DNA of 64,000 bases from IMGVR_UViG_3300035145_003993:62001-126000; one strand, 5' to 3'; numbered from the stretch's first letter, positions 8,001 to 37,033 are shown. The notes: generated from the sequence alone by a model not told the origin. Numbers and translations are program-made.

Positions 8001-8265
8001 CTGTTGTCGTAGAAGGATTTTTAACTGGGAATGATAAAGCTTTTGGTAAAGAATCACCTTGTAAAAGAGCAATATCACCATCTTCATCAGGAAAATTAAT
8101 TGTTCTATCATCTGTAGGGTCTGTAACTGTTAGTTGTAATTCGAAATCGTCAGCTGTGTCGCCTTCAAACGCTAATCCACCTGAACCTATTACTATTCTA
8201 TCTGTTGGTTTTAGAACTTTCTTTGATCCGTTATTATAATATACAAACTTTTCTATATCAGCCAT
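5002..8265 (-). CDS. Tail-fibre-like virion protein, 1087 aa, with internal duplications
   Basis: G/S/T-rich mosaic. Modules TDPTDDRTINFPD, RIGIGTSSP and FPTSDGTSGQVLQTNGSGVL; duplicated LYLGDSSRIYFGNDQDV block; C-terminal SAEMFVQDEAGNVTQISPH. Confidence 0.8.
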   Translation of the reverse strand: MADIEKFVYYNNGSKKVLKPTDRIVIGSGGLAFEGDTADDFELQLTVTDPTDDRTINFPDEDGDIALLQGDSLPKALSFPVKNPSTTTALTKGQLVYISGHSGNKPEVSLAQSNSSATMPAFGFVQSDIAAEAEGYVVYSGLFKGIDTNAEYSEGDTLYVSSTTAGEFQNTPPTGSNLIQNIGKIVKSDASNGEVLVGGAGRTNATPNLNEGKFFIGNASNQSTQSNYQLPTTLTNNAVLTSNSDSSSVALSSNLTWNNTGGADSNGLLTSQNISVTNRLSLGGSGSQFFAYNEDTVKVKFANWYSSNTRQYGQGQLWYEQWFGAIDDQAGAANRRVGFYLELPDKGASDASGGTGAHPENARMWIDVNSVGFHYDNPLRIHEDGTGEKHGTNYIQIQGQSSLASNRTLTLPDASGTFLVSDGYSMPSTLTNNAILVANSDGSSVLSTNLLTIDTSNDRIGIGTSSPARTLHLVGDVQYEGSMRIDQYHTSADGPDVLLQKARGTPATPTAVVAADELGKFVMYGHNGTSFLESAIIRSSATVDGSTYGGTLEFNTGTGGTTSNRLKIDETGTITFNNAYSFPTSDGTSGQVLQTNGSGVLTFASVSGGSTDLTNISSNVLPDGSNTRSLGSTAAEWSDLYLGDSSRIYFGNDQDVYLEHDPDAGLILDMSLDPALTPRLTIKNANTGIATGGEIEFLSETSSPAGNDIIGTITSTAKNSVSTLHEYTAVRSKIVSPTNNIESAGLYFYTATGGLFAGNASTEGLSIEGNISGHLLVDIPLHNATDSGLSLGGTLVKSTAAELNVLDTSTENPSDNDVLTYTAANGLHWTPSSVDLTSVSSNVVPSTADTYNLGSTSGEWANLYLGDSSRIYFGNDQDVTLQHIADSGLTLSMGSSQNAYDPTFTIQSNTSNTSGIGPQIKLQKMYTDPGDIVGDIYFQGYYSSVYDVYGRIKVRAPAQTHGNLQLSVLSGNVETVAIDIIGDSASSTTEIVNAGPIATKVTASDPSVRGNHAHIYSKDVSGSAEMFVQDEAGNVTQISPHNEEGDWVYWSENKKTGKKVKVNMEKMIRRLEEITGESFFEEYVEGT

Positions 8266-9373: not shown

Positions 9374-10714
9374 TTAAAGTTTTTCTGCGACTATATTAGC
9401 TAACTCTGACCTATAGCCTCGAGTAAAATTAACATGACCTGTTAAACTTTCATCCTTTAACTTTTCGGTCACAATTGTTAAACCATTAGAAAATTTATTA
9501 ACATAAGGTAAATCAACTTGCTCTATATCACCTAAAAGTATTACTTTAGAATTTCTTCCAGTTCTTGTAATTACTGTTTTAAGCTCATGAACAGTAGCAT
9601 TTTGTGCTTCGTCTACAATTATTATAGAATCATTAAAACTTCTACCACGAATATGTGATAATGGTGCTACGTCTATTTGTCCTTTTTCCATCATCATTTC
9701 AAAATAAGTCAAGTCTCCAAATTGATTTCTAAAATTGTCAACAATAGGTGCAAGCCACGGTGACATTTTTTCGTTTAAGTCACCAGGCAAAAAACCAATA
9801 TCTTTCCCTACAGTTTGTATAGGTCTAGTAAAAATAATTCTCTTTTTAGTATTTTTTTCAATAAACTTAAGTGCTGTCATTAAAGCTAGATAAGTTTTGC
9901 CGCTGCCAGGTATTCCTGTAAGTGTTACAAGTGGAATTTCTTCATTTAATAATAATTCTAATGCAAAAATCTGTTCTTTATTTTTAGGCTCAATACCACT
10001 TTGTTTTTGTAGCTCTTGTTTTGTTTCTAATATAACTAAGTTTTTAGTATTTCTCATCATCAAACAAGATTGATTACTTCCGTTGTTAGCCTTTAAAATA
10101 ACAAATTCATTTTCACTTATATTTAGGTTATAACCGTTGTCAATAAGATCTTCTTTTATTTTTAAATGATTACCAGAATATGCTCTGTTAATAATATCTG
10201 AATCGACTAATAGTTCAACGTGTCCTTGGTATAAATTGTCTGCCTCAACAAATTCATAATCTGCGTAGTAATCATTTGCTTCTATACCAACAGCGTCACT
10301 TTTAACTCTAAGATTGATGTCTTTAGTTATAACAATAACTTTGTTTTCTTCTTCATTTTTATTAATGACAAAATAATTTGCATTAGAAATTATGATATTA
10401 TCATTAGTGTTTTTATCTAATCCTTCTAAACCTTCCCATGAAGATAAAGAACTTACTTTTAGATTTATATTATGTTTTTCAATAAAAACTCCAGTATTTA
10501 AACTGCCTTTTTCTCTTAACTCATCTAGAAATCTGTTGTAAAATCTTGCATTTTCCCCTAATAAACCTTCTCTTGTTTTAAACCGATCCATTTCTTCTAG
10601 GACAACCATAGGAATAACAATATCATTCCCATGCATGTTAAACAATGCATGCTTATCATAAAGAAGTACACTTGTATCAACAATAAAAGTTTTTCTGTTC
10701 TGTTTTTTGTCCAT
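9374..10714 (-). CDS. phoH: PIN domain-PhoH family ATPase (PhoH2/YlaK type)
   Basis: N-terminal PIN motif FIVDTSVLL...VLEEMD...ITKDINLRVK; Walker A GIPGSGKT; IGFLPG; RGRSF; IVDEAQN; GDIEQ. Confidence 0.92.
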   Translation of the reverse strand: MDKKQNRKTFIVDTSVLLYDKHALFNMHGNDIVIPMVVLEEMDRFKTREGLLGENARFYNRFLDELREKGSLNTGVFIEKHNINLKVSSLSSWEGLEGLDKNTNDNIIISNANYFVINKNEEENKVIVITKDINLRVKSDAVGIEANDYYADYEFVEADNLYQGHVELLVDSDIINRAYSGNHLKIKEDLIDNGYNLNISENEFVILKANNGSNQSCLMMRNTKNLVILETKQELQKQSGIEPKNKEQIFALELLLNEEIPLVTLTGIPGSGKTYLALMTALKFIEKNTKKRIIFTRPIQTVGKDIGFLPGDLNEKMSPWLAPIVDNFRNQFGDLTYFEMMMEKGQIDVAPLSHIRGRSFNDSIIIVDEAQNATVHELKTVITRTGRNSKVILLGDIEQVDLPYVNKFSNGLTIVTEKLKDESLTGHVNFTRGYRSELANIVAEKL

Positions 10715-13243: not shown

Positions 13244-14878
13244 CTACATTTCTATATAACTTTCAATAAAATTTTTAGGAAGATGATGTTTATTTTTATT
13301 ATAAACTCTTTCCCAATCTCTATCAAGTATATATGTTATTGCTTCATCATTTTCTGATCTGATACTTCTTCCTACACTTTGTATAACTGTTCTTGTAGTT
13401 TGAAGATCATACCACCAATTCCATTTTTTAATTTTTTTACCTACAACTTTATCACCTAAATATGGAAACGGTATTTTACAAATTATTTGAAATTTAGATA
13501 ATTCTCCTTTTAAATTAACTCCTTCAGCCATTGAAGGAGAAATTAATATAGTAGGTTCTTTTGATTTAATGTGATTATCTAAAACTTTATCTCTATTTTC
13601 TCCGTAAGCAATTAATAGTCTTTTAGATCTTATAGATCTTTTTAAGAATTCAGCAATTTTTGTATTGTGTGTATGAATAATACCTTTTTCTTTAGGATGA
13701 TTTTTAATTATTTCTTTAACCATTGATAACATATTAGGTAAAGTTTTATCAATATTTTTCATAGACATGCTTCCCGCGGGAGAGTATACTATCGGACTTT
13801 TTTTAGGATCAAAAGGAGAGTCTTCTTTTACAGAAATAGTTTTATCAGATGGTAATCCTAACGTTAAAGAAAATCCTTCATGTGATAATATCGTTGCTGA
13901 CATGAATATTACAAAATCGGCATATTTTAGTAAATAATCATGAGCATATTCTGCAACTTCAATAGGTTTAAAAATAAATTTTTTATATGAATCATTTGAT
14001 TTTTCAATATCAAAAACCCAATTGTCTTTGTTGTATAAATTTATAAAGTTTAATATTTTTTTCTCGTGAGATACGAGCATATCAAGTCTTTTAGTTATTT
14101 TTGAAAATTCTTCTAGTTTTTGTGTTGTTAAACCAAATCTTTCCATTTGACTTGTGATATTTTTTATTTTACTAGATATTTTTGGATAATATACGTTTTT
14201 AATCCATAAAAAAGTTTGATACTGAGTTTTTAATGTTTTATCTAACTTTATTTTTAAAATCTTTTCAGCGAAATATTCAGAAATTGATATTTCTACAAAT
14301 CTAGATAATTCGTTTTCTAAATTATGAGCTTCATCTATTATAAGAACTCTTTTATTTGGAATTTTTTGACTAAATGATTTTTCTGTAAGGAAATAACTAA
14401 AATTTGTTATTCCTAAAGATTTCTCCATAAAATCTTTTTTCATTTTTTTATAACAACAATCATAACTACAACTACTATATTTTTTTGGAATACTTTTTGA
14501 TCTAAGACCAGTTTGTATATCTTTACAAGAAGTATTTTTATCTATAGAACATTTATAGTTTGAAGAAGAATATAAAGAGACTAAACCTGTTGATTTTGAA
14601 AAATCATCTTCGTATTGTTTTTGAAGTATTTTTTGAGTTGTTAAAAAATATGCTCCATTGTCATATTCTCTTTCGTATTCTGAATTGTTGATTAATGATT
14701 GAGCAATAGTTAGTCCTATTGCAGACTTTCCTACACCTGTCCCGCAATCAATAATTGCGTATTTTTTATTATTCTTGAATTCTTCTAGAACTTTGTTTAT
14801 TACGTTTTCTTGTTGTTTTCTTGGAGATTTATAAGGGAAAAATTTATCCCAATCATTTATATTAATAATATTATTCAA
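13244..14878 (-). CDS. DinG/XPD-like SF2 helicase
   Basis: Motif I GTGVGKS; IIDEAHN; MSAT; EGVNL; QSVGRSIRSEND; Cys cluster (YKC..C..CSYDCCY) at the Fe-S position. Confidence 0.88.
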   Translation of the reverse strand: MNNIININDWDKFFPYKSPRKQQENVINKVLEEFKNNKKYAIIDCGTGVGKSAIGLTIAQSLINNSEYEREYDNGAYFLTTQKILQKQYEDDFSKSTGLVSLYSSSNYKCSIDKNTSCKDIQTGLRSKSIPKKYSSCSYDCCYKKMKKDFMEKSLGITNFSYFLTEKSFSQKIPNKRVLIIDEAHNLENELSRFVEISISEYFAEKILKIKLDKTLKTQYQTFLWIKNVYYPKISSKIKNITSQMERFGLTTQKLEEFSKITKRLDMLVSHEKKILNFINLYNKDNWVFDIEKSNDSYKKFIFKPIEVAEYAHDYLLKYADFVIFMSATILSHEGFSLTLGLPSDKTISVKEDSPFDPKKSPIVYSPAGSMSMKNIDKTLPNMLSMVKEIIKNHPKEKGIIHTHNTKIAEFLKRSIRSKRLLIAYGENRDKVLDNHIKSKEPTILISPSMAEGVNLKGELSKFQIICKIPFPYLGDKVVGKKIKKWNWWYDLQTTRTVIQSVGRSIRSENDEAITYILDRDWERVYNKNKHHLPKNFIESYIEM

Positions 14879-14931: not shown

Positions 14932-15393
14932 TTATAAGTTTTTAAATAATATATTTTTTATAATAATATTAGCTTCGTCAGGAGAATCACAATAAATTAC
15001 TTCATTTTCTTTGTCATTAAAGTATAATGTAACAATATCTTTACCTTTTTCTGTATCAATACCAATTTCAGCATGAATTAAGTTTTTAAAATTTAAAACG
15101 TCACTAGCTGTATTTATTCCAGAATTATCTCCTGACAAGTTATCAGAATTAGATGACCTAAGATTTCTTCCAGGTGCTATATAATTCTCTTTTAATATAT
15201 AATCAGAATATAAGTTTAATGATATTTCTTTTATATGACTCTTTTTAAAGTATCTTTTATTAGAGTTATAGTATAAATTGCTTATAAGTGATTTTACATC
15301 TTTTAAAGAACTTTTTTCATTTATATTTTCTAAAATATAATTTGATTCAGCTCTTGATAACATAATGTAACAATTATCGTATTTTAAATACAT
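14932..15393 (-). CDS. Hypothetical protein
   Basis: 153-aa ORF, no recognised motif. Confidence 0.5.
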   Translation of the reverse strand: MYLKYDNCYIMLSRAESNYILENINEKSSLKDVKSLISNLYYNSNKRYFKKSHIKEISLNLYSDYILKENYIAPGRNLRSSNSDNLSGDNSGINTASDVLNFKNLIHAEIGIDTEKGKDIVTLYFNDKENEVIYCDSPDEANIIIKNILFKNL

Positions 15394-15395
15394 AT

Positions 15396-15653
15396 TTATT
15401 TCTCTTTTTTAACATCTTCTTCATCAAATATTTCAACAGCAGCTGAAATGTATTTATCTAATGCTGCTTGTCCTAAAACGTAACCAATAGTTAAACATGA
15501 TGATGAAACTACCATACCTAGTAAAAGTGTAGTTTCATAAATATCTAAAGTTCCTATATGAGTTATTAGATAACCCATTAAAAATTTTGTTGTAAGCTCT
15601 GAAATAATGTAGGCTAAAAATTTTTTACTTCTAATTGGATGTTTATCTATCAC
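15396..15653 (-). CDS. Two-TM membrane protein (holin-like)
   Basis: SKKFLAY start, two hydrophobic segments, charged C-terminal tail. Confidence 0.45.
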   Translation of the reverse strand: MIDKHPIRSKKFLAYIISELTTKFLMGYLITHIGTLDIYETTLLLGMVVSSSCLTIGYVLGQAALDKYISAAVEIFDEEDVKKEK

Positions 15654-15830
15654 TTTAATGTCCTTTTTAATTTTTTATAAATTATAAATATATTAAGTTT
15701 TACACAATATATAAGAAAGTTCTATTTAAATTAAATATTTTGATATTTATATTACGTGACAATATTTTTGTGATTTATAATATTTAAATTAAACTAATAA
15801 AGAAAAACTAAAAAAAGAAAAGTAATCAAA

Positions 15831-16694
15831 ATGTCGATAAGATTAGATGAAAATACTGTTGAAGCTAATATTGCAATTGTTTTAACTGATATTATCGGAT
15901 CGACTAAGTTTGTTCAAAAAAATGGATCATATACAGCAGCAAAATGGTTTGGAGCACACGATAAAGCTGTTATGAATTTTATTGCAAGACATAACGGACA
16001 GCTTATAGATGCTTCTGATGGACATTTAATGATGTTTTCTACAGTTGTTGATGCAATTGGTTTTTCATTTGAATATAAAAAATATTTAAGAAAGAAAAAA
16101 TTCCCTTTCAGGAGTCGCGTTGGTATACACTGGGACAAGATGTTAATCGTAAAGTCTGAAGCACATATTGTAAGAGCTGGAGGAAAGCGAATAAATCTAG
16201 AAGGTATAGGCAAAAACATTGCAGCACGTACTATGTCAATATGTGGTGAAGAACAAATCCTTATGTCAAGCCAAGCTTATATGCAATACAAAAAATTTGG
16301 TCATAGGAGTAACTACATACCTCAAAAAGCACTATCAGCCTTAGTCGGACTCTATTCCTTTAAAGGGGTTTCAGAACCTGAAGCTATTTACGCGATTGGT
16401 TTGATTGAGGCACAGCTTCAACCACCACCTGACGGTGAAAAAGCAAAAAGAATTGGTGGAGCTAGAAAAATAAGAACGAGACTAAGAAACAAAAACCTGA
16501 AAGAATTAGTTTGGTGGATAACATTAAAAATTTTTTGGATTTCTTTGGTTTTTATTTTTGTTTTTTTGATAAAAACAGCAGATAATTTCCATACTAATAG
16601 TATGTTTTATACTCTAACTGGCATCGATTTAAATTATTATATTGGATGGATTATTCCATTGTTTAACCAAATAGTTGAGTTGTTAAAAACTTAA
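15831..16694 (+). CDS. Class III nucleotide (adenylate/guanylate-type) cyclase with C-terminal TM segment
   Basis: VLTDIIGST; LIDASDGHLMMF; RVGIH; NIAART...QILMS; hydrophobic C-terminus. Confidence 0.85.
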   Translation: MSIRLDENTVEANIAIVLTDIIGSTKFVQKNGSYTAAKWFGAHDKAVMNFIARHNGQLIDASDGHLMMFSTVVDAIGFSFEYKKYLRKKKFPFRSRVGIHWDKMLIVKSEAHIVRAGGKRINLEGIGKNIAARTMSICGEEQILMSSQAYMQYKKFGHRSNYIPQKALSALVGLYSFKGVSEPEAIYAIGLIEAQLQPPPDGEKAKRIGGARKIRTRLRNKNLKELVWWITLKIFWISLVFIFVFLIKTADNFHTNSMFYTLTGIDLNYYIGWIIPLFNQIVELLKT

Positions 16695-17162
16695 TATTGA
16701 ATACCAAGGCGTTGGTCTACCGAAAACTATCGAGCCATTATATTCTTCATTTATAGCTGTACAGTTCAAAATAGATTTGATTCTAAGCTCAACAGTTGTC
16801 TGAGAGGTAGTAATAAGCACACATCTCGCAAAAGATTCAGATTTGTATCTATGTGTATTATCATTCCATGTTGCTGTACTAAGTTGGCAATCTTTACCAA
16901 GCCACACTGAGTTTGTAACGTCATACCATTGAAAGACCATATAACCTCCCGTATACGTTGTGCGTTTATCTATAAAAGCACTTGCTGTAAGTAATACAGA
17001 TAAACCGCTACTAATAACTAGTTGACCGTTTGAATTAGTTATACCTGTATGAGTAGCGCTAGTACATGGGATTCGTGTATTTACGTTTAAATCGGCTGGA
17101 ACACCAAGTGTGCTTTGTGTCTTATTAACATCAGGATTTGCTAAAAAAGGGGCATATGTCAT
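16683..17162 (-). CDS. Hypothetical beta-rich (C1q/TNF-like) protein
   Basis: Alternating aromatic/hydrophobic strands, TVELRI motif; co-oriented with three similar small genes. Confidence 0.4.
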   Translation of the reverse strand: MTYAPFLANPDVNKTQSTLGVPADLNVNTRIPCTSATHTGITNSNGQLVISSGLSVLLTASAFIDKRTTYTGGYMVFQWYDVTNSVWLGKDCQLSTATWNDNTHRYKSESFARCVLITTSQTTVELRIKSILNCTAINEEYNGSIVFGRPTPWYSILSF

Positions 17163-17171
17163 CTTTAACTC

Positions 17172-17573
17172 CTATAGTACAACACAAATAGAACTATTTA
17201 ATGTGTGATTCTCATCATTAAACTCATAATAGTGAATAGCTAGTTCATCGTTTGTATATTTAGCACACCCTACTGAACCACCAGAAATACTATTTGAATA
17301 CCCGTCAGATGTATCAAAACCAAAACCTCCTGTAGGTGTCGGGCAGTGACCTGCATTAGACAACAAGTTTGGAGATCCTCCTCCTGTATCATAAGTGTAA
17401 AGGTCACTGAAAGCTAAACCATTTTCAACAAACATTTTAGTAGTATGAAATGCGCCTGCACTTGTTCGAACTTCATCAATAGTTAGTTTATTTAGTTGAC
17501 CTACTACTCCTGTATCTTGACCAGAGTTAATAATTCCTACTGCAAACATTCCTCTTGGTAATCTATAACTCAT
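17172..17573 (-). CDS. Hypothetical protein (possible virion accessory)
   Basis: 133-aa G/S/T-rich ORF with SD. Confidence 0.45.
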   Translation of the reverse strand: MSYRLPRGMFAVGIINSGQDTGVVGQLNKLTIDEVRTSAGAFHTTKMFVENGLAFSDLYTYDTGGGSPNLLSNAGHCPTPTGGFGFDTSDGYSNSISGGSVGCAKYTNDELAIHYYEFNDENHTLNSSICVVL

Positions 17574-18013
17574 GTTCGTACTCCATAAATAACTAAGTCT
17601 GAATTTCCGATTGTCGTGGTTGAAAAATATGAGTCTGTCACCCTTAATTCAACATCAACTCCACCTTCTAGGGTAATTGCACTCGTATACATATCTGTGT
17701 TGAAAACATACGATCCATTAATATTACTATCCCAATCATTATGAGTAATGTACGGAAAGTCTGTATTTAATACATTATCTACATGCCATTTTATTTCAAT
17801 AGATCTATTAACATCATCAGGTTCAACTGACGCGTAACAAATCCACTCACCAGCAGGCAGACTAACCACACCGTTAGACACAGAAACTCCATGTCCACTT
17901 GTTCCTGTTGATATACTATAATTAATAGTATCACCTACAGACACAGATGCAGAATTTGCTTCAAGGTAAACGAGATATGTGCCTAGAGTTGCTTTTTTGT
18001 TGTTAAAACTCAT
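17570..18013 (-). CDS. Hypothetical beta-rich (C1q/TNF-like) protein
   Basis: VVSLPAGEW...VELRV; ATGA overlap with the next gene. Confidence 0.45.
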   Translation of the reverse strand: MSFNNKKATLGTYLVYLEANSASVSVGDTINYSISTGTSGHGVSVSNGVVSLPAGEWICYASVEPDDVNRSIEIKWHVDNVLNTDFPYITHNDWDSNINGSYVFNTDMYTSAITLEGGVDVELRVTDSYFSTTTIGNSDLVIYGVRT

Positions 18014-18022
18014 AATTCACTC

Positions 18023-18349
18023 CTAAACAATAAACCAATTTGCCCCATTACTTTGTAATGTAAGTGACTCGTAACGATTTATAATACTAACTGATGATTT
18101 GTTATCTATTAACTCTGTCCCACCAGAAATTCCTCCGTCACGGACGAGTCTTATTGTATAACCATTCGCATTGCTTTTAATATTATATTGATAACCATTA
18201 CCACACGTAACTGCTGAAGGGAGAAAAATGTCAATGTTTGCGCTTGCCGTTACTATATACGTCTCTCCATCACCTCTGTGATTAGTGATTGTATAATTAC
18301 TGCTTGGCGCAATACTGTTTGTATAAAAATTAGATTTTATATAAGTCAT
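18023..18349 (-). CDS. Small tail-fibre-domain-like protein
   Basis: IDIFLPSAVTCGNGYQYNIK...ESLTLQSNGANWFIV is typical of phage fibre modules. Confidence 0.55.
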   Translation of the reverse strand: MTYIKSNFYTNSIAPSSNYTITNHRGDGETYIVTASANIDIFLPSAVTCGNGYQYNIKSNANGYTIRLVRDGGISGGTELIDNKSSVSIINRYESLTLQSNGANWFIV

Positions 18350-18494
18350 ACTTTTCCCTTAACACATTATATATCGTTATATATCTATATATAAAACTAG
18401 AAAGAGAAAATCATGCAAAAAAATAATAAAAAGAAAAACACAAAATCAGACGACGCTTTACGACCATTTATATATTTCATTTGGGAGAAGAAGA

Positions 18495-18965
18495 ATGTCT
18501 AATAAAGAAGAAAAGACTCAAAAACAATTTACACAAACAGAAAAAGCAAAACGAGGTTGGTGGTTTAGCGTCGTTTTTATGATTCTTGTTATATGTTTAA
18601 TAATGTTCCTTGCTTTTATTCCTTTACAACAGGACAATCGAGATATCATTGTGGGTATGATTGGTATGATTACAGGAGCAATATCTTCAATGCTTTCAAT
18701 TGCTGCAGGACGAGACCCATCTGAAGTAGAGGAACTAAAGGATAAACTATCATCAGCAAATGCTGACCGTGCAGCTTTGATTGGACGTTTAAGAGATTCA
18801 CAAATTCAGATGCAGCTACTTAGAGAGCAAATATTTGAATTACAAAGTGCTGTAATTGACAAGTTGTCTTTGTTTAAAGGACAACATCCAATCAAAACTA
18901 AAAATATAAATCAAGTTGTTTTACATGATGAAGTTGAAGAGTGGCTTCCAAAATTAGAAAAATAA
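18495..18965 (+). CDS. Two-TM + coiled-coil membrane protein
   Basis: Hydrophobic segments at about aa 22-44 and 51-71, followed by a heptad-rich helix. Confidence 0.6.
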   Translation: MSNKEEKTQKQFTQTEKAKRGWWFSVVFMILVICLIMFLAFIPLQQDNRDIIVGMIGMITGAISSMLSIAAGRDPSEVEELKDKLSSANADRAALIGRLRDSQIQMQLLREQIFELQSAVIDKLSLFKGQHPIKTKNINQVVLHDEVEEWLPKLEK

Positions 18966-18982
18966 ATTTTTTTATATTTTAT

Positions 18983-19288
18983 TTAATTACACCACCAGTC
19001 ATCAAAAGAACCAAAATCTATTTGCTCATATAGACTATCAGGTATGCTTCCAACACAATCGTAACTAAACCATTCTCCTTCAAGTCTATACTTTCTTAAC
19101 TTCTCGTGTAATATTTTTTCTTTCCACCCAATATTTTTAAACTCTGCTATTAATTTCAGTCTATTAGGATTACCCGTTTGAAGCTGTTTTAATCTTTTTT
19201 GTGGGTCTTTAGATCTACCTATTTTTATCATTCCAGTTTTGTCTGATTGAATTAGATATAAACTGTCTTTGTTCATTTTAACACTCAT
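18983..19288 (-). CDS. T5orf172/GIY-YIG-like domain protein
   Basis: LYLIQ...IKIGRSKDPQKRLKQLQTGNP...EKILHEKL..YRLEGEWF. Confidence 0.85.
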   Translation of the reverse strand: MSVKMNKDSLYLIQSDKTGMIKIGRSKDPQKRLKQLQTGNPNRLKLIAEFKNIGWKEKILHEKLRKYRLEGEWFSYDCVGSIPDSLYEQIDFGSFDDWWCN

Positions 19289-19322
19289 AATTATAATTAT
19301 ATTTTATTAATAAAGGAATTAT

Positions 19323-20606
19323 ATGATTATTGTAACAGAAAATAAAAAAAATCACTATATGATTAAAAATTTTTTAATTGATTTTAAATCTTATCAAAAT
19401 ATAAATGAGAGTAGTAATGATAAAACTCATAAGTTCCACAAGGCATTTAATGATATGCCTGGACAAGACAATCCTGTTGGTTTTTATCCAAAAGTAAAAG
19501 ATAAAGAAAATGAGATAATCACAGACAAAGATATCACTAGGATTGCAACAGATGAGGAAATAGAATTTGTTGCTAATAAAAATAAAAAATATAAAAAATT
19601 TTTAAACAAATTTATCAATACAGCAAAAGTTTTACCATTTATGGCAGCTGTCTTATTATATAATTCAACACATATAGGATCTCCACAACATTATAAAGCT
19701 GTCGAGTTAATAAATGATGCAAATGAAAACGTTCAAGAAGAAGTTGATTTTAATGAAAAAAAATTATCATTGACAAAAAACGAAAAAGATATATTTATAG
19801 CTATAAAAAATAATCAATATGCATTTGATGGAGTTACTCAACAAAATGAAACTTCTTTGTATAATTTTGAAGGTTTTGCTTCAGAACCTTATAAAGATGC
19901 TGGAGGAATGTCGATAGGTTACGGAACTCAGCTTTTTTCAAAATGGAAAAATCCAAATAACTCAGGTTGGCAAAAAGTATTTTTTGAAAATATTCTAGGT
20001 AATCAAAAAACAAATAATCCAAAAACAGTTATAAGAAATGATATTGAAACAAAATTATCTGATATTACTAGTATTACTAAAAATGAAGCACGTAAAGCTA
20101 TAAATAAAATTCTTAAAAATAGAATAAAGTCTTTAGATTCTTACATTTTAGAACTACCAGGCACAGTACAGTTGGCTTATCTTGATATGACGATTAATAT
20201 GGGAGAAAATTTTAATATGCCAAAGTTTAAATCTCAATTGAAATACACATCAGATTTAATCAAAGAAGGAGAATTTGAAGTAGCAATTCAGGCTTTATCC
20301 GCTTCAATGAATCAAGCAGAGTTTAAAGTTGACCCTAATTATTTATCAATTATGCATTCTGATGATGAAAGTTATGATCCTTCAAAAGAAATTTATAGAT
20401 CTGCTTGGGCTACACAAAGTAAAAAAGCTTATTTAGCTAGTTCTGAAGAAGGAGAAATTCATAGGAGACCAAGATTCCTTTTAAGTTTAATGCAAGAAGG
20501 AGTTGACTTATTAAGAAGTAAATTAAATACTAAAAAAGAAAATACTAAAAAAGATGTTAACGAATCATATAGTATTAAAAGATTATACAAACATTTATTT
20601 GTATAA
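19323..20606 (+). CDS. Protein with a phage lysozyme-like (GH24/pesticin-type) muramidase domain
   Basis: LYNFEGFASEPYKDAGGMSIGYGT has the E-x8-D..T/SIGYG lysozyme signature; LAYLDMTINMG. Confidence 0.7.
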   Translation: MIIVTENKKNHYMIKNFLIDFKSYQNINESSNDKTHKFHKAFNDMPGQDNPVGFYPKVKDKENEIITDKDITRIATDEEIEFVANKNKKYKKFLNKFINTAKVLPFMAAVLLYNSTHIGSPQHYKAVELINDANENVQEEVDFNEKKLSLTKNEKDIFIAIKNNQYAFDGVTQQNETSLYNFEGFASEPYKDAGGMSIGYGTQLFSKWKNPNNSGWQKVFFENILGNQKTNNPKTVIRNDIETKLSDITSITKNEARKAINKILKNRIKSLDSYILELPGTVQLAYLDMTINMGENFNMPKFKSQLKYTSDLIKEGEFEVAIQALSASMNQAEFKVDPNYLSIMHSDDESYDPSKEIYRSAWATQSKKAYLASSEEGEIHRRPRFLLSLMQEGVDLLRSKLNTKKENTKKDVNESYSIKRLYKHLFV

Positions 20607-20617: not shown

Positions 20618-21370
20618 ATGAAAAAATCACTATTATTGTTCACTTTATTTTTGACAAACTTTGCTTTTGGTCAAGTTAACATAGAATCTATTAGAAATAA
20701 TGATAAACAAAAACCTCTTTGGGGAGAAGTTAAAGGTGGTTTAGAACTCCAAAGAGGAAATGTAGATATTACTTCTTTTGATTTAGATATCTTAGTTCAT
20801 TATAAAAAAAAGAAACATCATATCTTTTTACAATCAAAAAACTCTCAAGGGCAACAGGATGATAAAAAGTTTAAAAATAATTCTTTTATACATCTTAGAT
20901 GGACTTGGATGACCTGGGATATAATAGGTTTAGAACTTTTTACACAACTTCAACAAGATGAATTTAAATCACTCAAAATAAGACAATTAAATGGCGGTGG
21001 CTTTAGAGCTGAAGTATTAAAAAGAAAAGATTTTTCTTTAAGTTTAGGAACAGGAGTAATGTTAGATTACGAAGAAGTAGCTGAAAAAGAAAAAAGTTCT
21101 TTTTTTCGTAGTACTTCTTACTTAACCCTTATAAAATATTTTGATAAAAAGAAAAATAATTTAACGCTGTTTACACTTTACTATCAACCTTTATTTATCA
21201 ATGTAAACGATTATAGGATTAATCTAGAAGCAAACGTCCGTACAATTTTAATATCTTCTTGGAATATCTTTGTGGACAATTCAATTAATTATCTTTATGA
21301 TACAAAACCGCCTGAAGGTATTAATACAAATGATTTAATCATAAAAACTAATATTACATACACTTGGTAA
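20618..21370 (+). CDS. DUF481-like outer-membrane beta-barrel protein
   Basis: Signal peptide; amphipathic strands; GGLELQRGNVD; FTQLQQDEF; C-terminal TNITYTW ends in an aromatic residue (BAM signal). Confidence 0.75.
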   Translation: MKKSLLLFTLFLTNFAFGQVNIESIRNNDKQKPLWGEVKGGLELQRGNVDITSFDLDILVHYKKKKHHIFLQSKNSQGQQDDKKFKNNSFIHLRWTWMTWDIIGLELFTQLQQDEFKSLKIRQLNGGGFRAEVLKRKDFSLSLGTGVMLDYEEVAEKEKSSFFRSTSYLTLIKYFDKKKNNLTLFTLYYQPLFINVNDYRINLEANVRTILISSWNIFVDNSINYLYDTKPPEGINTNDLIIKTNITYTW

Positions 21371-21809: not shown

Positions 21810-22790
21810 TTAAATATTTACATCAAAATCTAAAATTCTTATCGACTCGGGAGAAGCATTTTCAATATTACTTAAAACAATTCCAATATTATCTTCATGT
21901 AAATCTGACGTTGTAATATAACCTAAAATTTTTTTAAAGAAAATTATATCTTTTCCAAAATCTACTTCACTAAAATCTTTAACCAAAGATAATTTAGACA
22001 TTTGTTCATAAATTGTTTGGTTACTTATATTAGGAAAAATTGAATCTAATTTTCCTGTTCTTTTTATTTTAGACACTTTTTCTTTAATCTCTTCCCCAAA
22101 TTCAGGAAATAGTTTTGTAAAAGATAAATAATCCCGGTGTAAATCATAATCACTTAAATCTAATTTTGATTTTTTTAATTTTCTTCTTTCAAAATGTACT
22201 AAACTCATCAACGTTTTTGTAATAAACTCTTTAAAATTTTTAGAGTCTTTTTTAAATTTATTATTTTCTCCTTCTAAACAATTCCAAAAAGTTGGAAAAA
22301 TTTTCTTTAATAAATTTAAATCTTGTATTTTATCTAATTGAACAACTTTTTCGCTAATTACCCACCAAGGATTTGAGTTAATTTTGTCCCAAGAATATAT
22401 TTGTACAAATCCTTCTTGAGCACCTGATCCATGTTTTCTATTAATTTGTATATCTAATTCTTTTTTATTATTTATTGCACCTGAAATGTTCATTGCAATT
22501 TTTAAAACCCATGGACTATTATTTAAAGAATAACCTTCTCTACTTAATCCTTGCCCTATTAAATTAATATTGTCTTTGTATAAAGTATTTTCTAACTTTT
22601 GATAAATCAAAGAAGTCTTGTCACGATAATAGTCATAATCATCTTCAGAGACAGATTCTTTAAATTTTAATATGACATTTTGCAGCATATCAGAATATTT
22701 TTTTATCTCTTTATCATCTGAAGATTTGAGGCTTTCATTTAAAAACTTGTTCCAGTCTTCGATTAATAAATTCCATTCTTTATTATTCAT
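21810..22790 (-). CDS. Protein-kinase-like-fold enzyme with N-terminal WNKFLNE leader
   Basis: GQGLSREGY (Gly loop), VLKIA (VAIK Lys), DLHEDNIG (catalytic loop), RILDFD (DFG-like). Confidence 0.75.
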   Translation of the reverse strand: MNNKEWNLLIEDWNKFLNESLKSSDDKEIKKYSDMLQNVILKFKESVSEDDYDYYRDKTSLIYQKLENTLYKDNINLIGQGLSREGYSLNNSPWVLKIAMNISGAINNKKELDIQINRKHGSGAQEGFVQIYSWDKINSNPWWVISEKVVQLDKIQDLNLLKKIFPTFWNCLEGENNKFKKDSKNFKEFITKTLMSLVHFERRKLKKSKLDLSDYDLHRDYLSFTKLFPEFGEEIKEKVSKIKRTGKLDSIFPNISNQTIYEQMSKLSLVKDFSEVDFGKDIIFFKKILGYITTSDLHEDNIGIVLSNIENASPESIRILDFDVNI

Positions 22791-22883
22791 AATTTTCTTT
22801 CTGATTTTTGAAATATTATATTATATATTTTACAATATAATTAAAAGAAAATTAAAATAACTTAAACGTAGTAATTTTAAATT

Positions 22884-23237
22884 TTAACCGTCAAATTCAT
22901 CATCGTCAGGAAAAGGATTCCCTTCAGTATCAAGTCCTATATTAAAGAGCATGTTTTCATTATATCTATTAAGAAAATCATTGATTTCTTCATTTGAAAT
23001 ATTTCTTCCCGTCAATTGTCTTCCAAATCTTCTTAAAAATTCTCGATTGTTATTTGCTCTTTCTTCATCTGATCGTTTAATATCTTCAATTTGGCTTTCA
23101 ACGTCTGAAAGAGCTAAACTTGTTGGATCTTGTCCATCATCTGGTAGAGGTGCAAAAATATCATCATCATCATTATAATTGTTTTCTGCAATAACTTTTC
23201 TTATAATACTTCTTAACTTACTCTCTGTTATTTTCAT
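22884..23237 (-). CDS. Hypothetical protein with MKITESKLRSIIRKVIAE leader
   Basis: SD AGGAG; leader shared with 24883-25380 and 25490-25951. Confidence 0.65.
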   Translation of the reverse strand: MKITESKLRSIIRKVIAENNYNDDDDIFAPLPDDGQDPTSLALSDVESQIEDIKRSDEERANNNREFLRRFGRQLTGRNISNEEINDFLNRYNENMLFNIGLDTEGNPFPDDDEFDG

Positions 23238-23371
23238 ATAAACTCCTATTAAGTCTTATTTTATATATTATTATTTATATATATTATTGTTTAAATAAAT
23301 ATCATATAAATTATGAATATAGATTAAGGTCATCCAGAAAATAGACACCTTATTCGAGAAATAATTTACTT

Positions 23372-23917
23372 TTATACTTCAATAAAGTCAATAAACGACG
23401 ATTCACGTAATTTTTTCAATACAATCAACTCGCCAACTTTATAATAACACTTAGATAAAGAACTATCAATATCTCCTGAAAGTTGATGATACTCAATATC
23501 AGGCCTCATCATATACTTATCCCACACACTTTTAGCATCATCAGACACTTTACCACGATCACTCATCAAACAAACACCCTCCTCCGACGCCTTTTCAATC
23601 AATATTTCATAAAGTAAAGGCCCAAAACCTTTAGTCACAGGAAAAGTCTCAAATATAAAAAAGTTTCCTGATGATCTTTCACTCAATTCTCTTTCAAAAT
23701 CAATCGCTCCACTCACCACATCATCCTTAACATCATACTCAACTCGACCATAGTCTCCATCCAGATCGTATACAATCTTAACCTTACTCCCGTTTCGAGA
23801 TATTTCTTCAAGATTGTTAACAATCCTTAATATACTCTCTACACTCGCTACTTCAAAGCTCTCACTTAAAGAAACACGCCATCCTTCAACTAACTCTCGA
23901 TACTCTTTTCGATTCAT
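23372..23917 (-). CDS. GNAT-like acetyltransferase-fold protein with leader
   Basis: KGFGPLLYEILIE...LMSDRGKVSDDAKSVWDKY fits GNAT motif A plus S-x-x-A-x-x-W; coding strand is very C-poor. Confidence 0.6.
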   Translation of the reverse strand: MNRKEYRELVEGWRVSLSESFEVASVESILRIVNNLEEISRNGSKVKIVYDLDGDYGRVEYDVKDDVVSGAIDFERELSERSSGNFFIFETFPVTKGFGPLLYEILIEKASEEGVCLMSDRGKVSDDAKSVWDKYMMRPDIEYHQLSGDIDSSLSKCYYKVGELIVLKKLRESSFIDFIEV

Positions 23918-23957
23918 AAGTTAAATCCTGTTTGATTTTTTTACTCTGTCTATATAT

Positions 23958-23999
23958 TTAAAAAATAAAATTTTGAATATAATTTTCTAATAACTTCAT
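23958..23999 (-). CDS. 13-aa mini-ORF MKLLENYIQNFIF (leader-like remnant)
   Basis: AAAGGA SD upstream; resembles KILLESYILN of the adjacent gene. Confidence 0.3.
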   Translation of the reverse strand: MKLLENYIQNFIF

Positions 24000-24040
24000 A
24001 TAAAATTCCTTTAATTATATAGTAAATATTTATTAAAATT

Positions 24041-24886
24041 CTAAGTTAAACTATTTAAACAAACAACGTTGTTTTGAAAAAGACCAATTATTTTTTTCCA
24101 CACTTCTAAAGAATCACTGTGAAAATTTTGATAAAATTCATTAAAATCTTCATAATCTTCCATTTTATCTCTAAATATATTTTCATCAACTTGATTAATA
24201 TGTCTGTTTATAATAGTAAAAGCTCCTAAACTTGGAATAAAATCCATACCACCAACGCCTTCAGTAAAACCATAATGTTTTAAAAATATCAAAGCATCGT
24301 TCTGATATATTGTTGACAGTTCACGATATCCATTTACATCTTTTAACATTGAATACTTATTTATAATATCTTTAGTAGATCTTGACATTTTATAATCTTT
24401 ATAATCATACCACCCTACGAAATCGACAATTCTATGCCAAATATCATGTACCATCCAATCTAAATTATCTTGAACTAAATTAACTTTCCCTTTATCAAGG
24501 AAATTTCCAACATTAATACAGATAAATACGGGTAATTCATCTTCAAATTCTCCACCAACACTGTCAATATCTTTCTTAGGAATAAATGACTTAATATGAT
24601 CAATTATGTTTTCATTCTTTTCGAAAATATAACATTGTTTGTGTATAAATTCAAATTGTTCATCACTCAAATATACTCTTTTTGAACCATCATATTGATC
24701 AAACATATTCGAAAATAATTTCTGATCACAGTTTATACCTATTAGCCACGCATTAAGATCAAAATTTTCTTGAGAAACTTTTTCTTTCGATAGATTTTTG
24801 TTTAACTGAAATTTGCTAAAACGTCCTTTTTCAAGTAAAAGGTTTAAAATATAACTTTCTAACAATATTTTTTCTTTTTTATTCAT
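24041..24886 (-). CDS. Hypothetical protein with LLESYILNLLLE leader
   Basis: 281 aa; contains WMVHDIWH (HD-like, possibly metal-binding). Confidence 0.6.
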   Translation of the reverse strand: MNKKEKILLESYILNLLLEKGRFSKFQLNKNLSKEKVSQENFDLNAWLIGINCDQKLFSNMFDQYDGSKRVYLSDEQFEFIHKQCYIFEKNENIIDHIKSFIPKKDIDSVGGEFEDELPVFICINVGNFLDKGKVNLVQDNLDWMVHDIWHRIVDFVGWYDYKDYKMSRSTKDIINKYSMLKDVNGYRELSTIYQNDALIFLKHYGFTEGVGGMDFIPSLGAFTIINRHINQVDENIFRDKMEDYEDFNEFYQNFHSDSLEVWKKIIGLFQNNVVCLNSLT

Positions 24887-25380
24887 TTGTCAATTCTATT
24901 TCCAAATTTATTATATTTGTTACCAAAAAAAGCTTTTCTAAATGAATCAATTTTTTTCTTATTTTCAAGATCAATTATTTTTTTTGAACTTTCTCTTGCA
25001 TCATATAACGATTTTGTTTTTAAATCAAAACCTTCAAGATAACTTATTGCGTCATTCACACATTCTTTAAATTCTATAGGATTCTCACTTTTTGTATGTT
25101 CTTCATATAGAAAATTTATAAATTTATGAAAATGTCCAGGGTCATTATAAACTTCTTTTGTCAAATTACTTAGGTCTTCACCATTAATTTTTACAAAGAC
25201 ACCAGTGTTAGGTGACATATTAATATTAAAGTATTGATCATCTTTTATAGGAAAGTTATTTTTTAATTCTCTTTCCATTTCTTCGAAAAATTTTTCTTTT
25301 GTATTATATTTTGTTATAGAACTAGATTCTTTAATTATTTGTCTTATAAGACTTCTTAATTTGTTCTCTGTTATTCTCAC
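24883..25380 (-). CDS. Hypothetical protein with MRITENKLRSLIRQIIKE leader
   Basis: GTG start with AGGAG SD. Confidence 0.65.
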   Translation of the reverse strand: MRITENKLRSLIRQIIKESSSITKYNTKEKFFEEMERELKNNFPIKDDQYFNINMSPNTGVFVKINGEDLSNLTKEVYNDPGHFHKFINFLYEEHTKSENPIEFKECVNDAISYLEGFDLKTKSLYDARESSKKIIDLENKKKIDSFRKAFFGNKYNKFGNRIDK

Positions 25381-25489
25381 GTTAACTCCTAAATAACTTT
25401 ATTTATAAATCTATATATTATCTTATATTATAAATTAAAGTCTATTCGTGATAAACGTAAGACAATCTTTTTACTTAATACTGAATTTT

Positions 25490-25951
25490 TTAACTCATTA
25501 ATTTTTTAAACTCAACTAAAACTTCTTTAATGTTTTCACTCATTTTTACAATGTCATATAAAAATATATTATTATGATCAATTTCAACTCTTACTACAGC
25601 ATAATAATCAGGTTCTGGGAATTTAAGTTGATATGGTTCTGCTTTCACCAATAAATATCCACACTCGCCCATATTATCTCGACTCCAAATTGCATTATGT
25701 CTAACAAATTCATTTGTAAACAAAGCAGCCGTATATGCATCATGTCCTAAATCCAATCCTAAATCCAATCGATCAGAAATCTTGTGTCCAATAGTAACTA
25801 ATTCGTCTCTAAGCGTATCTTCATCTAATTTCTTTACAAACAAATCAGTAAAAATTTCTTTTTCATCACGATCATGTAGGTTTTCTTCACCATATGACTC
25901 TTTAATTACTTGACGAATAATATTTCTTAATCTACTCTCTGTTATTTTCAT
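25490..25951 (-). CDS. Hypothetical protein with MKITESRLRNIIRQVIKE leader
   Basis: AGGAG SD; last minus-strand gene before the divergence point. Confidence 0.65.
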   Translation of the reverse strand: MKITESRLRNIIRQVIKESYGEENLHDRDEKEIFTDLFVKKLDEDTLRDELVTIGHKISDRLDLGLDLGHDAYTAALFTNEFVRHNAIWSRDNMGECGYLLVKAEPYQLKFPEPDYYAVVRVEIDHNNIFLYDIVKMSENIKEVLVEFKKLMS

Positions 25952-26040
25952 TTTTTTCTCCTAATGAAATCTTATAACTTATAATATATATCTTTTATAA
26001 TATAAAAAAAATTTAATTTATATAAACGTTGTGACTCAAG

Positions 26041-37024: not shown

Positions 37025-37033
37025 AGGATAAAG

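What the first reader, a model, noticed from the sequence alone, without database searches (positions are those of the whole stretch)
15831..16694. Membrane-anchored class III cyclase with altered specificity residues
Seen: both metal Asp (TDIIGST, ASDG) and the N..AR transition-state residues are present. The adenine-specifying Lys position reads Asp (LIDASDG), and the usual Asp/Thr site reads NLEG. Established: substitutions at these sites change base specificity, e.g. in Pycsar cCMP/cUMP cyclases. Inference: the phage makes a non-cAMP signal to manipulate host signalling or defence.
Basis: partly seen in the sequence, partly recalled or inferred. Interest (0 to 1): 0.6.

Follow-up and report, generated by a model that had tools for sequence, protein, structure and literature searches.

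The report
Phage membrane cyclase with obligate partner
A large uncultured aquatic phage carries a real, membrane-anchored nucleotide cyclase with unusual base-selecting residues that is always paired with a small two-helix membrane protein, so phages of very different sizes share a portable two-gene signalling cassette whose product and target are still unknown.

Summary
Window 15831-16694 (+) encodes a 287-aa protein with a complete class III cyclase domain: metal Asp20/Asp63 and transition-state Asn129/Arg133. It has a basic linker and a C-terminal membrane helix. The AF2 model (pLDDT 92) matches the mycobacterial adenylyl cyclases Ma1120 and Rv1900c at Z 22-23.

Asp60 sits where adenylyl cyclases have Lys, and Asn122 where they have Asp.

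- Asp at the Lys site is not a phage adaptation. It is present in 148 of 150 representatives of a divergent subfamily of receptor-type cyclases. Only Asn122 (Glu in most relatives) and Arg120 mark this lineage.
- The link to Pycsar is weak.
- The product cannot be read from sequence.

New here:
- The gene belongs to a virus-only clade, with no relative found in 185,579 species genomes.
- It is half of an obligate two-gene module. A conserved 156-aa protein with two TM helices and a coiled coil (window 18495-18965) follows the cyclase in every related locus, usually with overlapping stop and start codons.
- In the reverse test, 77 of 77 testable loci had the cyclase upstream. In this window a four-gene insertion splits the pair.
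- The cassette occurs in phages from 36 kb to about 250 kb.

Function of the pair is inferred, not shown.

The parts
15831..16694 (+). Cyclase gene, 287 aa (P0001). Key codons: Asp20 15888-15890, Asp60 16008-16010, Asp63 16017-16019, Arg120 16188-16190, Asn122 16194-16196, Asn129 16215-16217, Arg133 16227-16229, Lys178 16362-16364.
   Evidence: ORF. There are 457 homologues. Catalytic residues are invariant. dN/dS is 0.05-0.12.
15855..16418 (+). Class III cyclase homology domain, residues about 9-196.
   Evidence: AF2 pLDDT 92.4. Foldseek TM-score 0.90-0.91 to Ma1120 and Rv1900c. VIA Z 22.8 with rmsd 1.7 over 161 residues. HMMER to Ma1120 gives 3e-6, or 1.5e-8 with a profile. TIGR04510 N-terminal region gives 1.1e-34.
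16419..16496 (+). Conserved basic juxtamembrane linker, residues 197-222, with a QPP..EK.KR.GG motif. It includes a short strand at 205-209.
   Evidence: Q197, P198, P199, K204, R207, G209 and G210 are invariant in the family. P199 and K204 are nearly invariant in the family-plus-relatives alignment, and the PP..SEKAKR stretch is visible in the cellular relatives inspected.
16503..16589 (+). Transmembrane helix, residues about 225-253.
   Evidence: Hydropathy segment 225-253 scores 2.44. AF2 predicts a helix at 223-251. Cellular TIGR04510-type relatives have a TM at the same place.
16590..16691 (+). Short C-terminal tail, residues 254-287, with two predicted helices. Asn256, Gly264 and Asp266 are nearly invariant. 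It stands where the cellular relatives have a long extracytoplasmic sensor region.
18495..18965 (+). Partner gene 'TMcc', 156 aa: a basic N-terminus, two TM helices (the second Gly-rich) and a long conserved coiled coil. This is the ancestral downstream neighbour of the cyclase.
   Evidence: It follows the cyclase on the same strand in all related loci, with gaps of -11 to +19 nt in most. In the reverse test 77 of 80 TMcc loci have a cyclase upstream, and the other 3 lack upstream DNA. Alignment A4 has 61% mean column identity. AF2 predicts helices at 9-41, 49-70 and 75-123. dN/dS is 0.03-0.17.
16683..18349 (-). Insertion of four small minus-strand genes (159, 133, 147 and 108 aa) that splits the cyclase-TMcc pair. 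Its first gene overlaps the cyclase 3' end by 12 nt. It is not part of the module.
   Evidence: ORFs. The insertion is absent from most related loci, present at the same place in L012 and elsewhere in L013. No family hits were found for the two of the four genes that were scanned, the 159- and 147-aa genes with PHROGs and the 159- and 133-aa genes with Pfam; the 108-aa gene was not scanned. GC is 0.358.
15396..15653 (-). Small 85-aa membrane protein with two hydrophobic helices and an acidic tail, transcribed divergently. It is linked to the module only within the window's own clade.
   Evidence: tblastn finds it near the cyclase in all loci of the closer clade, but in only 23 of 77 loci of the wider set.
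15654..15830 (.). AT-rich divergent intergenic region upstream of the cyclase.
   Evidence: Sequence. The promoter scan does not exceed shuffled controls.

Best explanation
The ORF encodes an active class III nucleotidyl cyclase, anchored in the host inner membrane by one C-terminal helix with the catalytic domain in the cytoplasm. It works together with the co-inherited two-TM coiled-coil protein TMcc as a portable two-gene accessory cassette of aquatic phages.

Shown here:
- The fold, the full catalytic residue set and the TM helix.
- Strong purifying selection on both genes.
- A virus-only clade.
- Obligate linkage to TMcc, usually translationally coupled.
- Presence of the cassette in unrelated phage backbones.

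Inferred by homology:
- Two domains form a head-to-tail dimer.
- Asp20 and Asp63 hold two divalent metals.
- Ser24/Thr25, Arg96 and Lys178 hold the triphosphate.
- Asn129 and Arg133 stabilise the transition state.
- An NTP is converted to a 3',5'-cyclic NMP plus pyrophosphate.

Evolutionary reading: the protein looks like the catalytic head plus TM helix of cellular receptor-type cyclases (TIGR04510-like: cyclase domain, TM, TPR) with the external sensor replaced by about 35 residues. Output is therefore either constitutive or controlled through TMcc. The cytoplasmic coiled coil of TMcc lies on the same side of the membrane as the catalytic domain.

Base choice is unresolved. The pocket has Asp60, Arg120 and Asn122 instead of Lys and Asp. 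An acidic residue at the Lys site, and Arg two residues before the second site, resemble guanylate cyclases (Glu ... Arg-x-Cys; this motif is from memory). My rough odds are GTP/cGMP 0.35, ATP/cAMP 0.3, a pyrimidine 0.1, and other or promiscuous 0.25.

The phage record holds no cNMP-binding domain. The receiver is therefore a host protein or TMcc itself.
For: Fold and residues. Conservation and selection. Membrane topology. Subfamily context and loss of the sensor. Virus-only clade: tree support 0.995, none in genome contigs, 31 cyclase loci and 319 TMcc relatives in IMG/VR. Linkage. Cassette in a complete 36.5-kb DTR phage between terminase/ThyX and portal. Cassette in a contig with RNR, a RecD-like helicase and ThyX. 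Here it lies beside helicase and PhoH. No PF00027 in the record. An acidic residue at the Lys site is the main guanine determinant in guanylate cyclases: PMC7384201.
Against: There are no biochemical data. Pfam PF00211 does not hit this protein at all, so it is a divergent member. Most cellular relatives have Pro where the transition-state Asn lies, so the subfamily's chemistry is itself uncharacterised. Asp60 is invariant across a subfamily whose second site varies, so it may serve a structural or metal role rather than base selection. Relatives carry Lys or Arg at position 61, which could be the true Lys equivalent. The beta2-beta3 turn is one residue shorter than in solved cyclases. The complex prediction for cyclase plus TMcc gave no answer. 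No RNA evidence of expression was found. The host is unknown.
Confidence: 0.6

Rival explanations
1. It is an ordinary adenylyl cyclase. Despite the odd pair of residues it makes cAMP, raising host cAMP to switch CRP-type regulation or metabolism in favour of the phage, like an auxiliary metabolic gene. TMcc merely anchors or tunes it.
For: The closest solved structures are adenylyl cyclases. JGI annotates relatives as class 3 adenylate cyclase. Rv1900c, an adenylyl cyclase by its PDB title, has Asn rather than Lys at the site aligned with Asp60. Adenylate cyclase genes have been reported as pelagiphage accessory genes (PMC9599517). No phage-encoded receptor was found.
Against: No basic residue lies at or next to the Lys site in this lineage (Ala61). 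The Lys/Asp pair that contacts adenine N1 and N6 is absent. The obligate and very conserved partner is not explained by simple cAMP overproduction.
Confidence: 0.3
2. It is a phage-borne, Pycsar-like conflict module. The cyclase senses a trigger such as a second infecting phage or membrane stress and makes a cNMP. TMcc is then the membrane effector that depolarises or blocks the membrane, giving superinfection exclusion, abortive infection against rivals, or control of lysis timing.
For: The architecture is a two-gene cyclase plus small TM protein. There are weak PycC hits. The cellular relatives include fusions to STAND NTPases and TPR, as described for 'immune clade 1' cyclases. The cassette moves between unrelated phages and has a higher GC than its neighbours.
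Against: TMcc has no cNMP-binding domain, and there is none in the record, unlike the Pycsar and Pucsar effectors. The cyclase clade shows strong conservation rather than the fast evolution reported for immune cyclases. No sensor domain is evident.
Confidence: 0.2
3. It is a pseudo-enzyme or works by other chemistry. The domain is kept as a nucleotide-binding or scaffolding module and makes no cyclic mononucleotide, or it makes something else such as a different nucleotide product.
For: There is no Pfam hit. Most of the subfamily lacks the catalytic Asn. No member has been characterised, and no papers were found for TIGR04510.
Against: In the phage clade every catalytic residue is retained and invariant, including Asn129, which the cellular relatives mostly lack. 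Such retention is unusual for pseudo-enzymes.
Confidence: 0.07

Closest known systems
Mycobacterial class III adenylyl cyclases Ma1120 (PDB 4wp3, 5d15) and Rv1900c/LipJ (PDB 1ybt, 1ybu)
   Same: The catalytic fold matches (Z 22-23, rmsd 1.4-2.0 over 156-171 residues). The metal Asp pair, the Arg of the transition-state pair and the compact domain without long inserts are shared. Rv1900c also lacks the Lys, with Asn at the site aligned to Asp60.
   Different: Identity is 22-24%. The base pair is Asp/Asn instead of Lys/Asp or Asn/Asp. The beta2-beta3 turn is one residue shorter. The phage protein has a C-terminal TM anchor and no N-terminal regulatory domain. It is virus-encoded and has an obligate partner gene.
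TIGR04510 'putative peptide modification system cyclase' and related cellular proteins built as cyclase domain, TM, then TPR, PEGA or STAND
   Same: This is the best family match (1.1e-34 over model positions 7-204). The D-x-[ST]-D-G and E/N-x-E-G...A-R motifs are shared, with the same conserved PP..EK.KR linker and a TM helix at the same place. It is the next sister group in the tree.
   Different: The score is 120 bits against a cut-off of 400, because only the first quarter of the model is present. The phage protein has no extracytoplasmic TPR region. The phage clade has Asn129 where most cellular members have Pro, and this lineage has Asn122 instead of Glu. The family itself has not been characterised experimentally.
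Pycsar and Pucsar antiphage systems (PycC or PucC cyclase plus a cNMP-binding TM or TIR effector)
   Same: A class III-type cyclase is encoded next to a small membrane protein, with non-canonical base selection. There are weak PADLOC PycC matches.
   Different: It is encoded by phages, not hosts. The partner has no cNMP-binding domain. The sequence is much closer to TIGR04510-type domains. None of the 50 best structural matches listed is described as a Pycsar cyclase. The cyclase itself is membrane-anchored.
Adenylate cyclase of pelagiphage curli (T8SS) clusters (PMC9599517)
   Same: It is a marine phage accessory gene annotated as adenylate cyclase and shared between small and large phages.
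   Different: No CsgG or FecR was found in this record, and no CsgG in five other module-bearing records. The neighbours differ. Homology between the two cyclases could not be tested because those sequences were not to hand.
Guanylate cyclases (RhGC, Cya2, sGC)
   Same: There is an acidic residue at the Lys site. Arg lies two residues before the second specificity site (the R-x-C motif is from memory). Fold matches reach Z 20-21.6.
   Different: Asp stands in place of Glu, and Asn in place of Cys, Ser or Gly. There is no N-terminal coiled-coil transducer. Identity is 14-20%.

Membership tests
Class III nucleotidyl cyclase (cyclase homology domain) | The cyclase homology domain fold | tested here: met
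   AF2 pLDDT is 92.4. Foldseek E is 1e-13 with TM-score 0.90. VIA Z is 22.8 to Ma1120 and Rv1900c.
Class III nucleotidyl cyclase (cyclase homology domain) | Two metal-binding Asp (strand beta-1 and the beta2-beta3 turn) | tested here: met
   Asp20 and Asp63 align with the metal Asp of Ma1120 and Rv1900c. Both are invariant.
Class III nucleotidyl cyclase (cyclase homology domain) | Transition-state Asn and Arg on helix alpha-4 | tested here: met
   Asn129 and Arg133 align with the His/Arg of Rv1900c. They are invariant in the close family. Asn is present in 52 of 58 phage sequences.
Class III nucleotidyl cyclase (cyclase homology domain) | A score above the Pfam PF00211 gathering threshold | tested here: not met
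   This protein has no Pfam hit at E up to 1. Clade members P0125 and P0126 do pass, at 32.1 and 29.7 bits against 21.9.
Class III nucleotidyl cyclase (cyclase homology domain) | Head-to-tail dimer with shared active sites, and cNMP synthesis | not testable with these tools
Adenylyl cyclase (ATP-specific class III) | Lys on beta-2 and Asp or Thr on beta-5 contacting adenine N1 and N6 | tested here: not met
   Asp60 and Asn122 occupy these positions. The role of the pair is taken from PMC7384201.
Guanylyl cyclase (GTP-specific class III) | Glu at the Lys site and Cys, Ser, Gly or similar at the second site | tested here: not met
   The site is acidic but Asp rather than Glu, and the second site is Asn. 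This is a resemblance only.
TIGR04510 mod_pep_cyc | A full-length match above the curated cut-off (400 bits), covering the cyclase domain, TM and TPR region | tested here: not met
   The score is 120.2 bits, and only model positions 7-204 of 814 are matched.
Pycsar / Pucsar | An adjacent effector with a cNMP-binding domain (TM or TIR type) | tested here: not met
   The partner TMcc has no such domain. PF00027 is absent from the 211-kb record. The effectors are described.
Pycsar / Pucsar | The cyclase belongs to the PycC clade | tested here: inconclusive
   PADLOC PycC models give partial matches at E 2.4e-6 and weaker. These are far below the TIGR04510 match. No joint tree with PycC sequences was built.
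Pelagiphage curli-cluster adenylate cyclase | Co-location with CsgG, CsgF and FecR | tested here: not met
   No CsgG or FecR was found in the own record. No CsgG was found in five other records that carry the module.

The most novel reading that the evidence does not exclude
A virus-exclusive two-component cyclic-nucleotide module. The phage cyclase makes a non-cAMP nucleotide, most plausibly cGMP, at the inner membrane. Its co-encoded two-TM coiled-coil partner is a new kind of receiver or regulator that lacks any known cNMP-binding domain. The phage would use the pair to control the host membrane, lysis timing or exclusion of rival phages, or to feed decoy signal into host cyclic-nucleotide immunity.
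Probability: 0.2. Interest if true: 0.85.

Novelty: new variant of a known kind. Interest (0 to 1): 0.62.

Why it matters
Cyclic nucleotides are now known as central currency in bacterial anti-phage immunity (Pycsar, Pucsar, CBASS, Panoptes). Phages are so far known mainly to destroy or sponge these signals. A widespread, strongly conserved phage-encoded cyclase would show that phages also write such signals. This one is stripped of its sensor, tied to the membrane and always paired with one small membrane protein.

The pair is compact at about 1.35 kb. It is found from 36-kb to about 250-kb phages in seawater, estuary and wetland samples, and it is easy to test in a laboratory host. It also gives a handle on a large cellular cyclase subfamily (TIGR04510-like) that has not been characterised and whose Asp-for-Lys pocket has no assigned specificity.

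Tried and rejected
1. Complex prediction on cyclase plus TMcc returned no answer (score 0.00). This is not evidence for or against binding.
2. The promoter and terminator scan of 15300-19400 did not exceed shuffled controls in this AT-rich DNA.
3. tblastn of the cyclase, two clade relatives and TMcc against 50,697 GenBank phage records found no true homologue. It gave only a 25-28% match in a faecal phage contig and a weak TM match in a Vibrio phage. Megablast of the locus found nothing.
4. The genome-contig scan found no cellular relative. It relies on two exact peptide patterns, so distant relatives would be missed.
5. Public runs: only DNA metagenomes hold the locus and there is no RNA run, so expression is untested.
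6. Pfam, PHROGs, PADLOC and the ESM Atlas gave no function for TMcc. Its AF2 model (pLDDT 68.8) was judged too weak for a fold search.
7. Literature:
   - The DUF2652 'cyclase-like' paper (PMC4886424) concerns another family.
   - There are no papers on TIGR04510.
   - No paper on phage class III cyclases was found, apart from the curli-linked pelagiphage AC. That one was rejected as the same system on context.
   - A text search of the Pycsar structure paper PMC11224242 gave nothing usable.
8. The idea that the 85-aa membrane gene is a third obligate member was rejected. It is found in only 23 of 77 wider loci.
9. A phage-encoded phosphodiesterase or receptor was sought and not found. There is no Lactamase_B_2 or cNMP_binding domain. 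The one Metallophos hit lies in a 1062-aa frame elsewhere in the record.
10. Residue-level structural superposition was not possible, because model coordinates are not exposed. The Asp60 = Lys equivalence therefore rests on two HMMER alignments and the strand register.

Full report
**What is there**

Window 15831-16694 (+) is an intact ORF of 287 codons. The window is part of a 211-kb IMG/VR virus record estimated 84% complete. GC is about 23-35%. The neighbours are phage genes:
- a PIN-PhoH fusion at 9374-10714;
- a DinG-like helicase at 13244-14878 (PHROG 1e-109);
- a 1637-aa protein with head-decoration repeats;
- an RNA-ligase/tail-fibre attachment protein;
- three tRNAs.

The helicase's best cultured relatives are jumbo phages at about 30% identity. 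This is therefore an uncultured large phage of a group with no isolate in the GenBank phage set searched. The only public runs holding the locus are wetland, estuary and seawater DNA metagenomes.

**Checking the observation**

- Pfam finds nothing.
- NCBIfam TIGR04510 matches residues 15-207 at 1.1e-34, and the LipJ cyclase model matches at 1e-7.
- phmmer finds the solved adenylyl cyclases Ma1120 (3e-6) and Rv1900c (7e-4). A family profile improves both.

An AF2 model built on 56 sequences has pLDDT 92.4. It superposes on Ma1120 and Rv1900c with Foldseek TM-score 0.90-0.91. VIA gives Z 22-23 at rmsd 1.4-2.0 over nearly the whole target. Guanylate cyclases follow at Z 20-21.6.

In the HMMER alignments:
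- Asp20 and Asp63 fall on the two metal Asp.
- Asp60 falls on the substrate Lys of Ma1120. This is the residue changed to Glu in the 'KDA to EGY' mutant 5d0g. In Rv1900c the aligned residue is Asn.
- Asn122 falls on the substrate Asp of Rv1900c.
- Asn129 and Arg133 fall on Rv1900c's His/Arg pair.

Strand beta-2 of the model ends at residue 60, which fits that register. The following turn is one residue shorter than in the solved enzymes.

A Lys/Arg-rich linker leads to a hydrophobic helix at 225-253.

**The gene is real and constrained**

The word search returned 457 homologues of 280-300 aa from marine metagenomes. In 21 sequences down to 62% identity, every catalytic residue plus Asp60, Arg120, Asn122 and Glu124 is invariant. 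dN/dS against five relatives is 0.05-0.12.

**Where the unusual residues come from**

An exhaustive profile search of 1.84 billion cluster representatives gave 2274 hits. After the phage-type proteins come 800-1400 aa cellular proteins in which the same domain is N-terminal. It is followed by a TM helix at about residue 225-255 and then TPR, PEGA or STAND-NTPase regions. Some carry an ECF-sigma or kinase instead. One is named 'putative peptide modification system cyclase'.

Across the 150 best representatives:
- position 60 is Asp in 148;
- position 122 is Glu in 134;
- position 124 is Glu in most;
- position 129 is mostly Pro;
- Arg133 and Lys178 are kept.

Asp-for-Lys is therefore an old trait of a whole divergent subfamily, not a phage invention.

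The phage clade stands out by keeping the catalytic Asn129. Among 58 distinct phage sequences, 41 have Glu122, 16 (the window's lineage) have Asn122, and one has Ser.

The two types co-vary with neighbouring pocket residues:
- The window lineage has Thr19, Ala/Asn61 and Arg120-Ile-Asn122.
- The others have Leu19, Glu58, Arg61 and Glu122.
- Cellular relatives have Lys61.

This leaves a caveat. In relatives a basic residue next to Asp60 might act as the Lys equivalent. In that case the window lineage has lost both members of a Lys/Glu pair.

Literature read here says that adenine is read by Lys and Asp/Thr. Guanine is read mainly by a Glu at the Lys site, with the second residue giving shape (PMC7384201). 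From memory, guanylate cyclases also have Arg two residues before the second site (R-x-C). The window lineage has Arg120-x-Asn122. I therefore lean slightly to GTP, but the product cannot be decided from sequence.

**Relation to Pycsar**

PADLOC PycC models give only partial hits at 2e-6 or worse. A 2026 preprint describes two immunity clades of cNMP cyclases. One holds Pycsar and Pucsar. The other is fused to STAND NTPases. It attributes pyrimidine choice in Pycsar to pocket residues other than the Lys/Asp pair. The cellular relatives found here resemble the STAND/TPR-fused kind, but I did not test membership.

**The main new finding: an obligate partner**

In relatives the cyclase is followed on the same strand by a 156-166 aa gene. 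tblastn over 40 loci finds this gene next to the cyclase wherever the cyclase is 40-92% identical. The spacing is -11 to +19 nt in most loci, and often a 4-nt overlap.

It is the gene at window 18495-18965. In the window, four unrelated minus-strand genes (16683-18349) are inserted between the two. Nine other loci have insertions of 1.2-3.9 kb in the same place.

The reverse test is clean. IMG/VR holds 319 relatives of the partner. Of the best 80 loci, 77 have a cyclase-domain ORF directly upstream on the same strand. The other three have fewer than 300 nt of upstream sequence.

The partner ('TMcc') has these features:
- a basic N-terminus;
- two TM helices, the second Gly-rich;
- a long, very conserved coiled coil.

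By the positive-inside rule the coiled coil is cytoplasmic, on the same side as the catalytic domain. TMcc can be more conserved than the cyclase: 65% against 40% identity in L008. The identities of the two genes are discordant between loci, which suggests recombination between them.

TMcc has no known domain, and its look-alikes are virus-only clusters. A complex prediction gave no answer.

**A mobile, virus-only cassette**

In a FastTree of 201 domains, all short TM-anchored proteins form one clade with support 0.995. The TMcc-linked ones form a subclade, also at 0.995. The 830-900 aa TIGR04510-type proteins are the next sister group.

No relative was found in one genome each of 185,579 species, nor in 50,697 GenBank phage records.

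The cassette sits in very different backbones:
- Here it lies beside helicase, NUDIX and PhoH.
- In a complete 36.5-kb phage with terminal repeats it lies between terminase/ThyX and portal.
- In another contig it lies beside RNR, a RecD-like helicase and ThyX.
- A more distant short cyclase without TMcc lies inside a myovirus baseplate module.

Cyclase and TMcc have a higher GC (0.33) than their neighbours (0.25-0.26).

The record holds no cNMP-binding domain and no Apyc1-type (Lactamase_B_2) domain; its one metallophosphoesterase match lies in a 1062-aa frame far from the module and does not look like a dedicated cNMP phosphodiesterase.

Pelagiphage curli clusters were reported to include an adenylate cyclase (PMC9599517). 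No CsgG or FecR was found in the own record, and no CsgG in five other records that carry the module. This is therefore a different context.

**How it most likely works**

Shown:
- a catalytically complete, membrane-anchored cyclase domain;
- an obligate, usually translationally coupled partner;
- a virus-only, mobile cassette under purifying selection.

Inferred:
- The cyclase dimerises and makes a 3',5'-cNMP at the inner membrane.
- It has lost the external sensor of its cellular cousins. It is therefore constitutive, or governed by or acting through TMcc.
- The signal acts on a host receptor or on TMcc.

Because the cassette works in unrelated phages, its target is more likely the host cell or rival phages than a phage-specific process. 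Rivals are plain cAMP production, a Pycsar-like exclusion or lysis-timing module, and a pseudo-enzyme. They are weighed in their own sections.

**Verdict**

The finding is a new viral variant of class III cyclases with an uncharacterised specificity pocket and an unrecognised obligate partner.

No alternative genetic code was needed.

Noticed in passing
window 16683-18349 (-): Four small genes (159, 133, 147 and 108 aa) with no family hits in the three that were scanned (the 108-aa gene was not) and no detectable similarity to each other. Their GC (0.358) is higher than that of the surrounding genes. They are inserted between the cyclase and its partner, and the first overlaps the cyclase 3' end by 12 nt. 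The same set is at the same place in L012 and after the partner in L013, so it behaves as a mobile block.
   Followed up: partly
window 18983-19288 (-), 19323-20606 (+), 20618-21370 (+): Three genes are conserved downstream of the module in the closer relatives. The first is a T5orf172/MUG113-type gene; in relatives the equivalent gene hits PF10544/PF13455. The second is a 427-aa protein with a sub-threshold lysozyme-like match. The third is a DUF481 protein (Pfam 3e-21). A phage-borne DUF481 gene is unusual. From memory, not a tool result, DUF481 is an outer-membrane beta-barrel family; if so, this hints at a Gram-negative host.
   Followed up: partly
window 9374-10714 (-) and relatives L002, L005: The PhoH-like protein is fused to an N-terminal PIN_4 domain. 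Between it and the helicase, relatives carry a sigma-70 region 4 protein, an Hc1 histone-like protein and a NUDIX hydrolase.
   Followed up: no
L013, L018 versus window (cyclase and partner genes): Identity of the two module genes is discordant between phages. In L018 the cyclase is 75% and the partner 94% identical. In L013 the cyclase is 92% and the partner 61%. This points to recombination between the two genes, perhaps helped by the insertions.
   Followed up: partly
L010 8001-8819 and L011: A more distant short TM-anchored cyclase (272 aa, Pro at the Asn site) lies inside a myovirus baseplate module, between a gp5-like spike gene (Phage_base_V) and gp25. It has no TMcc partner, and its downstream 118-aa gene is soluble and acidic. 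Whether it is carried in the virion is open.
   Followed up: no
window 1-4911 (-) and 5002-8265 (-): Two very large ORFs. The 1637-aa ORF is open at the window edge and has repeated head-decoration-like domains. The 1087-aa ORF has a weak phage cement match.
   Followed up: no
window 51443-53906 (+): Three tRNA genes (Met-CAT, Thr-TGT, Lys-TTT) are clustered around a 432-aa ORF.
   Followed up: no
window about 22000-26000 and 36000-40000: There are strong GC-skew excursions of opposite sign (-0.34 and +0.36) that coincide with blocks of genes on opposite strands. Cumulative skew turns near 33-34 kb.
   Followed up: no
cellular relatives P0132, P0135, P0130: The same divergent cyclase domain occurs in cellular proteins in several arrangements. 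In one it lies between an ECF sigma factor and a Ser/Thr kinase domain. In another it sits before a TM helix and a PEGA domain. In a third it is fused to NACHT/AAA_16 plus TPR. Most of these have Pro in place of the catalytic Asn.
   Followed up: partly
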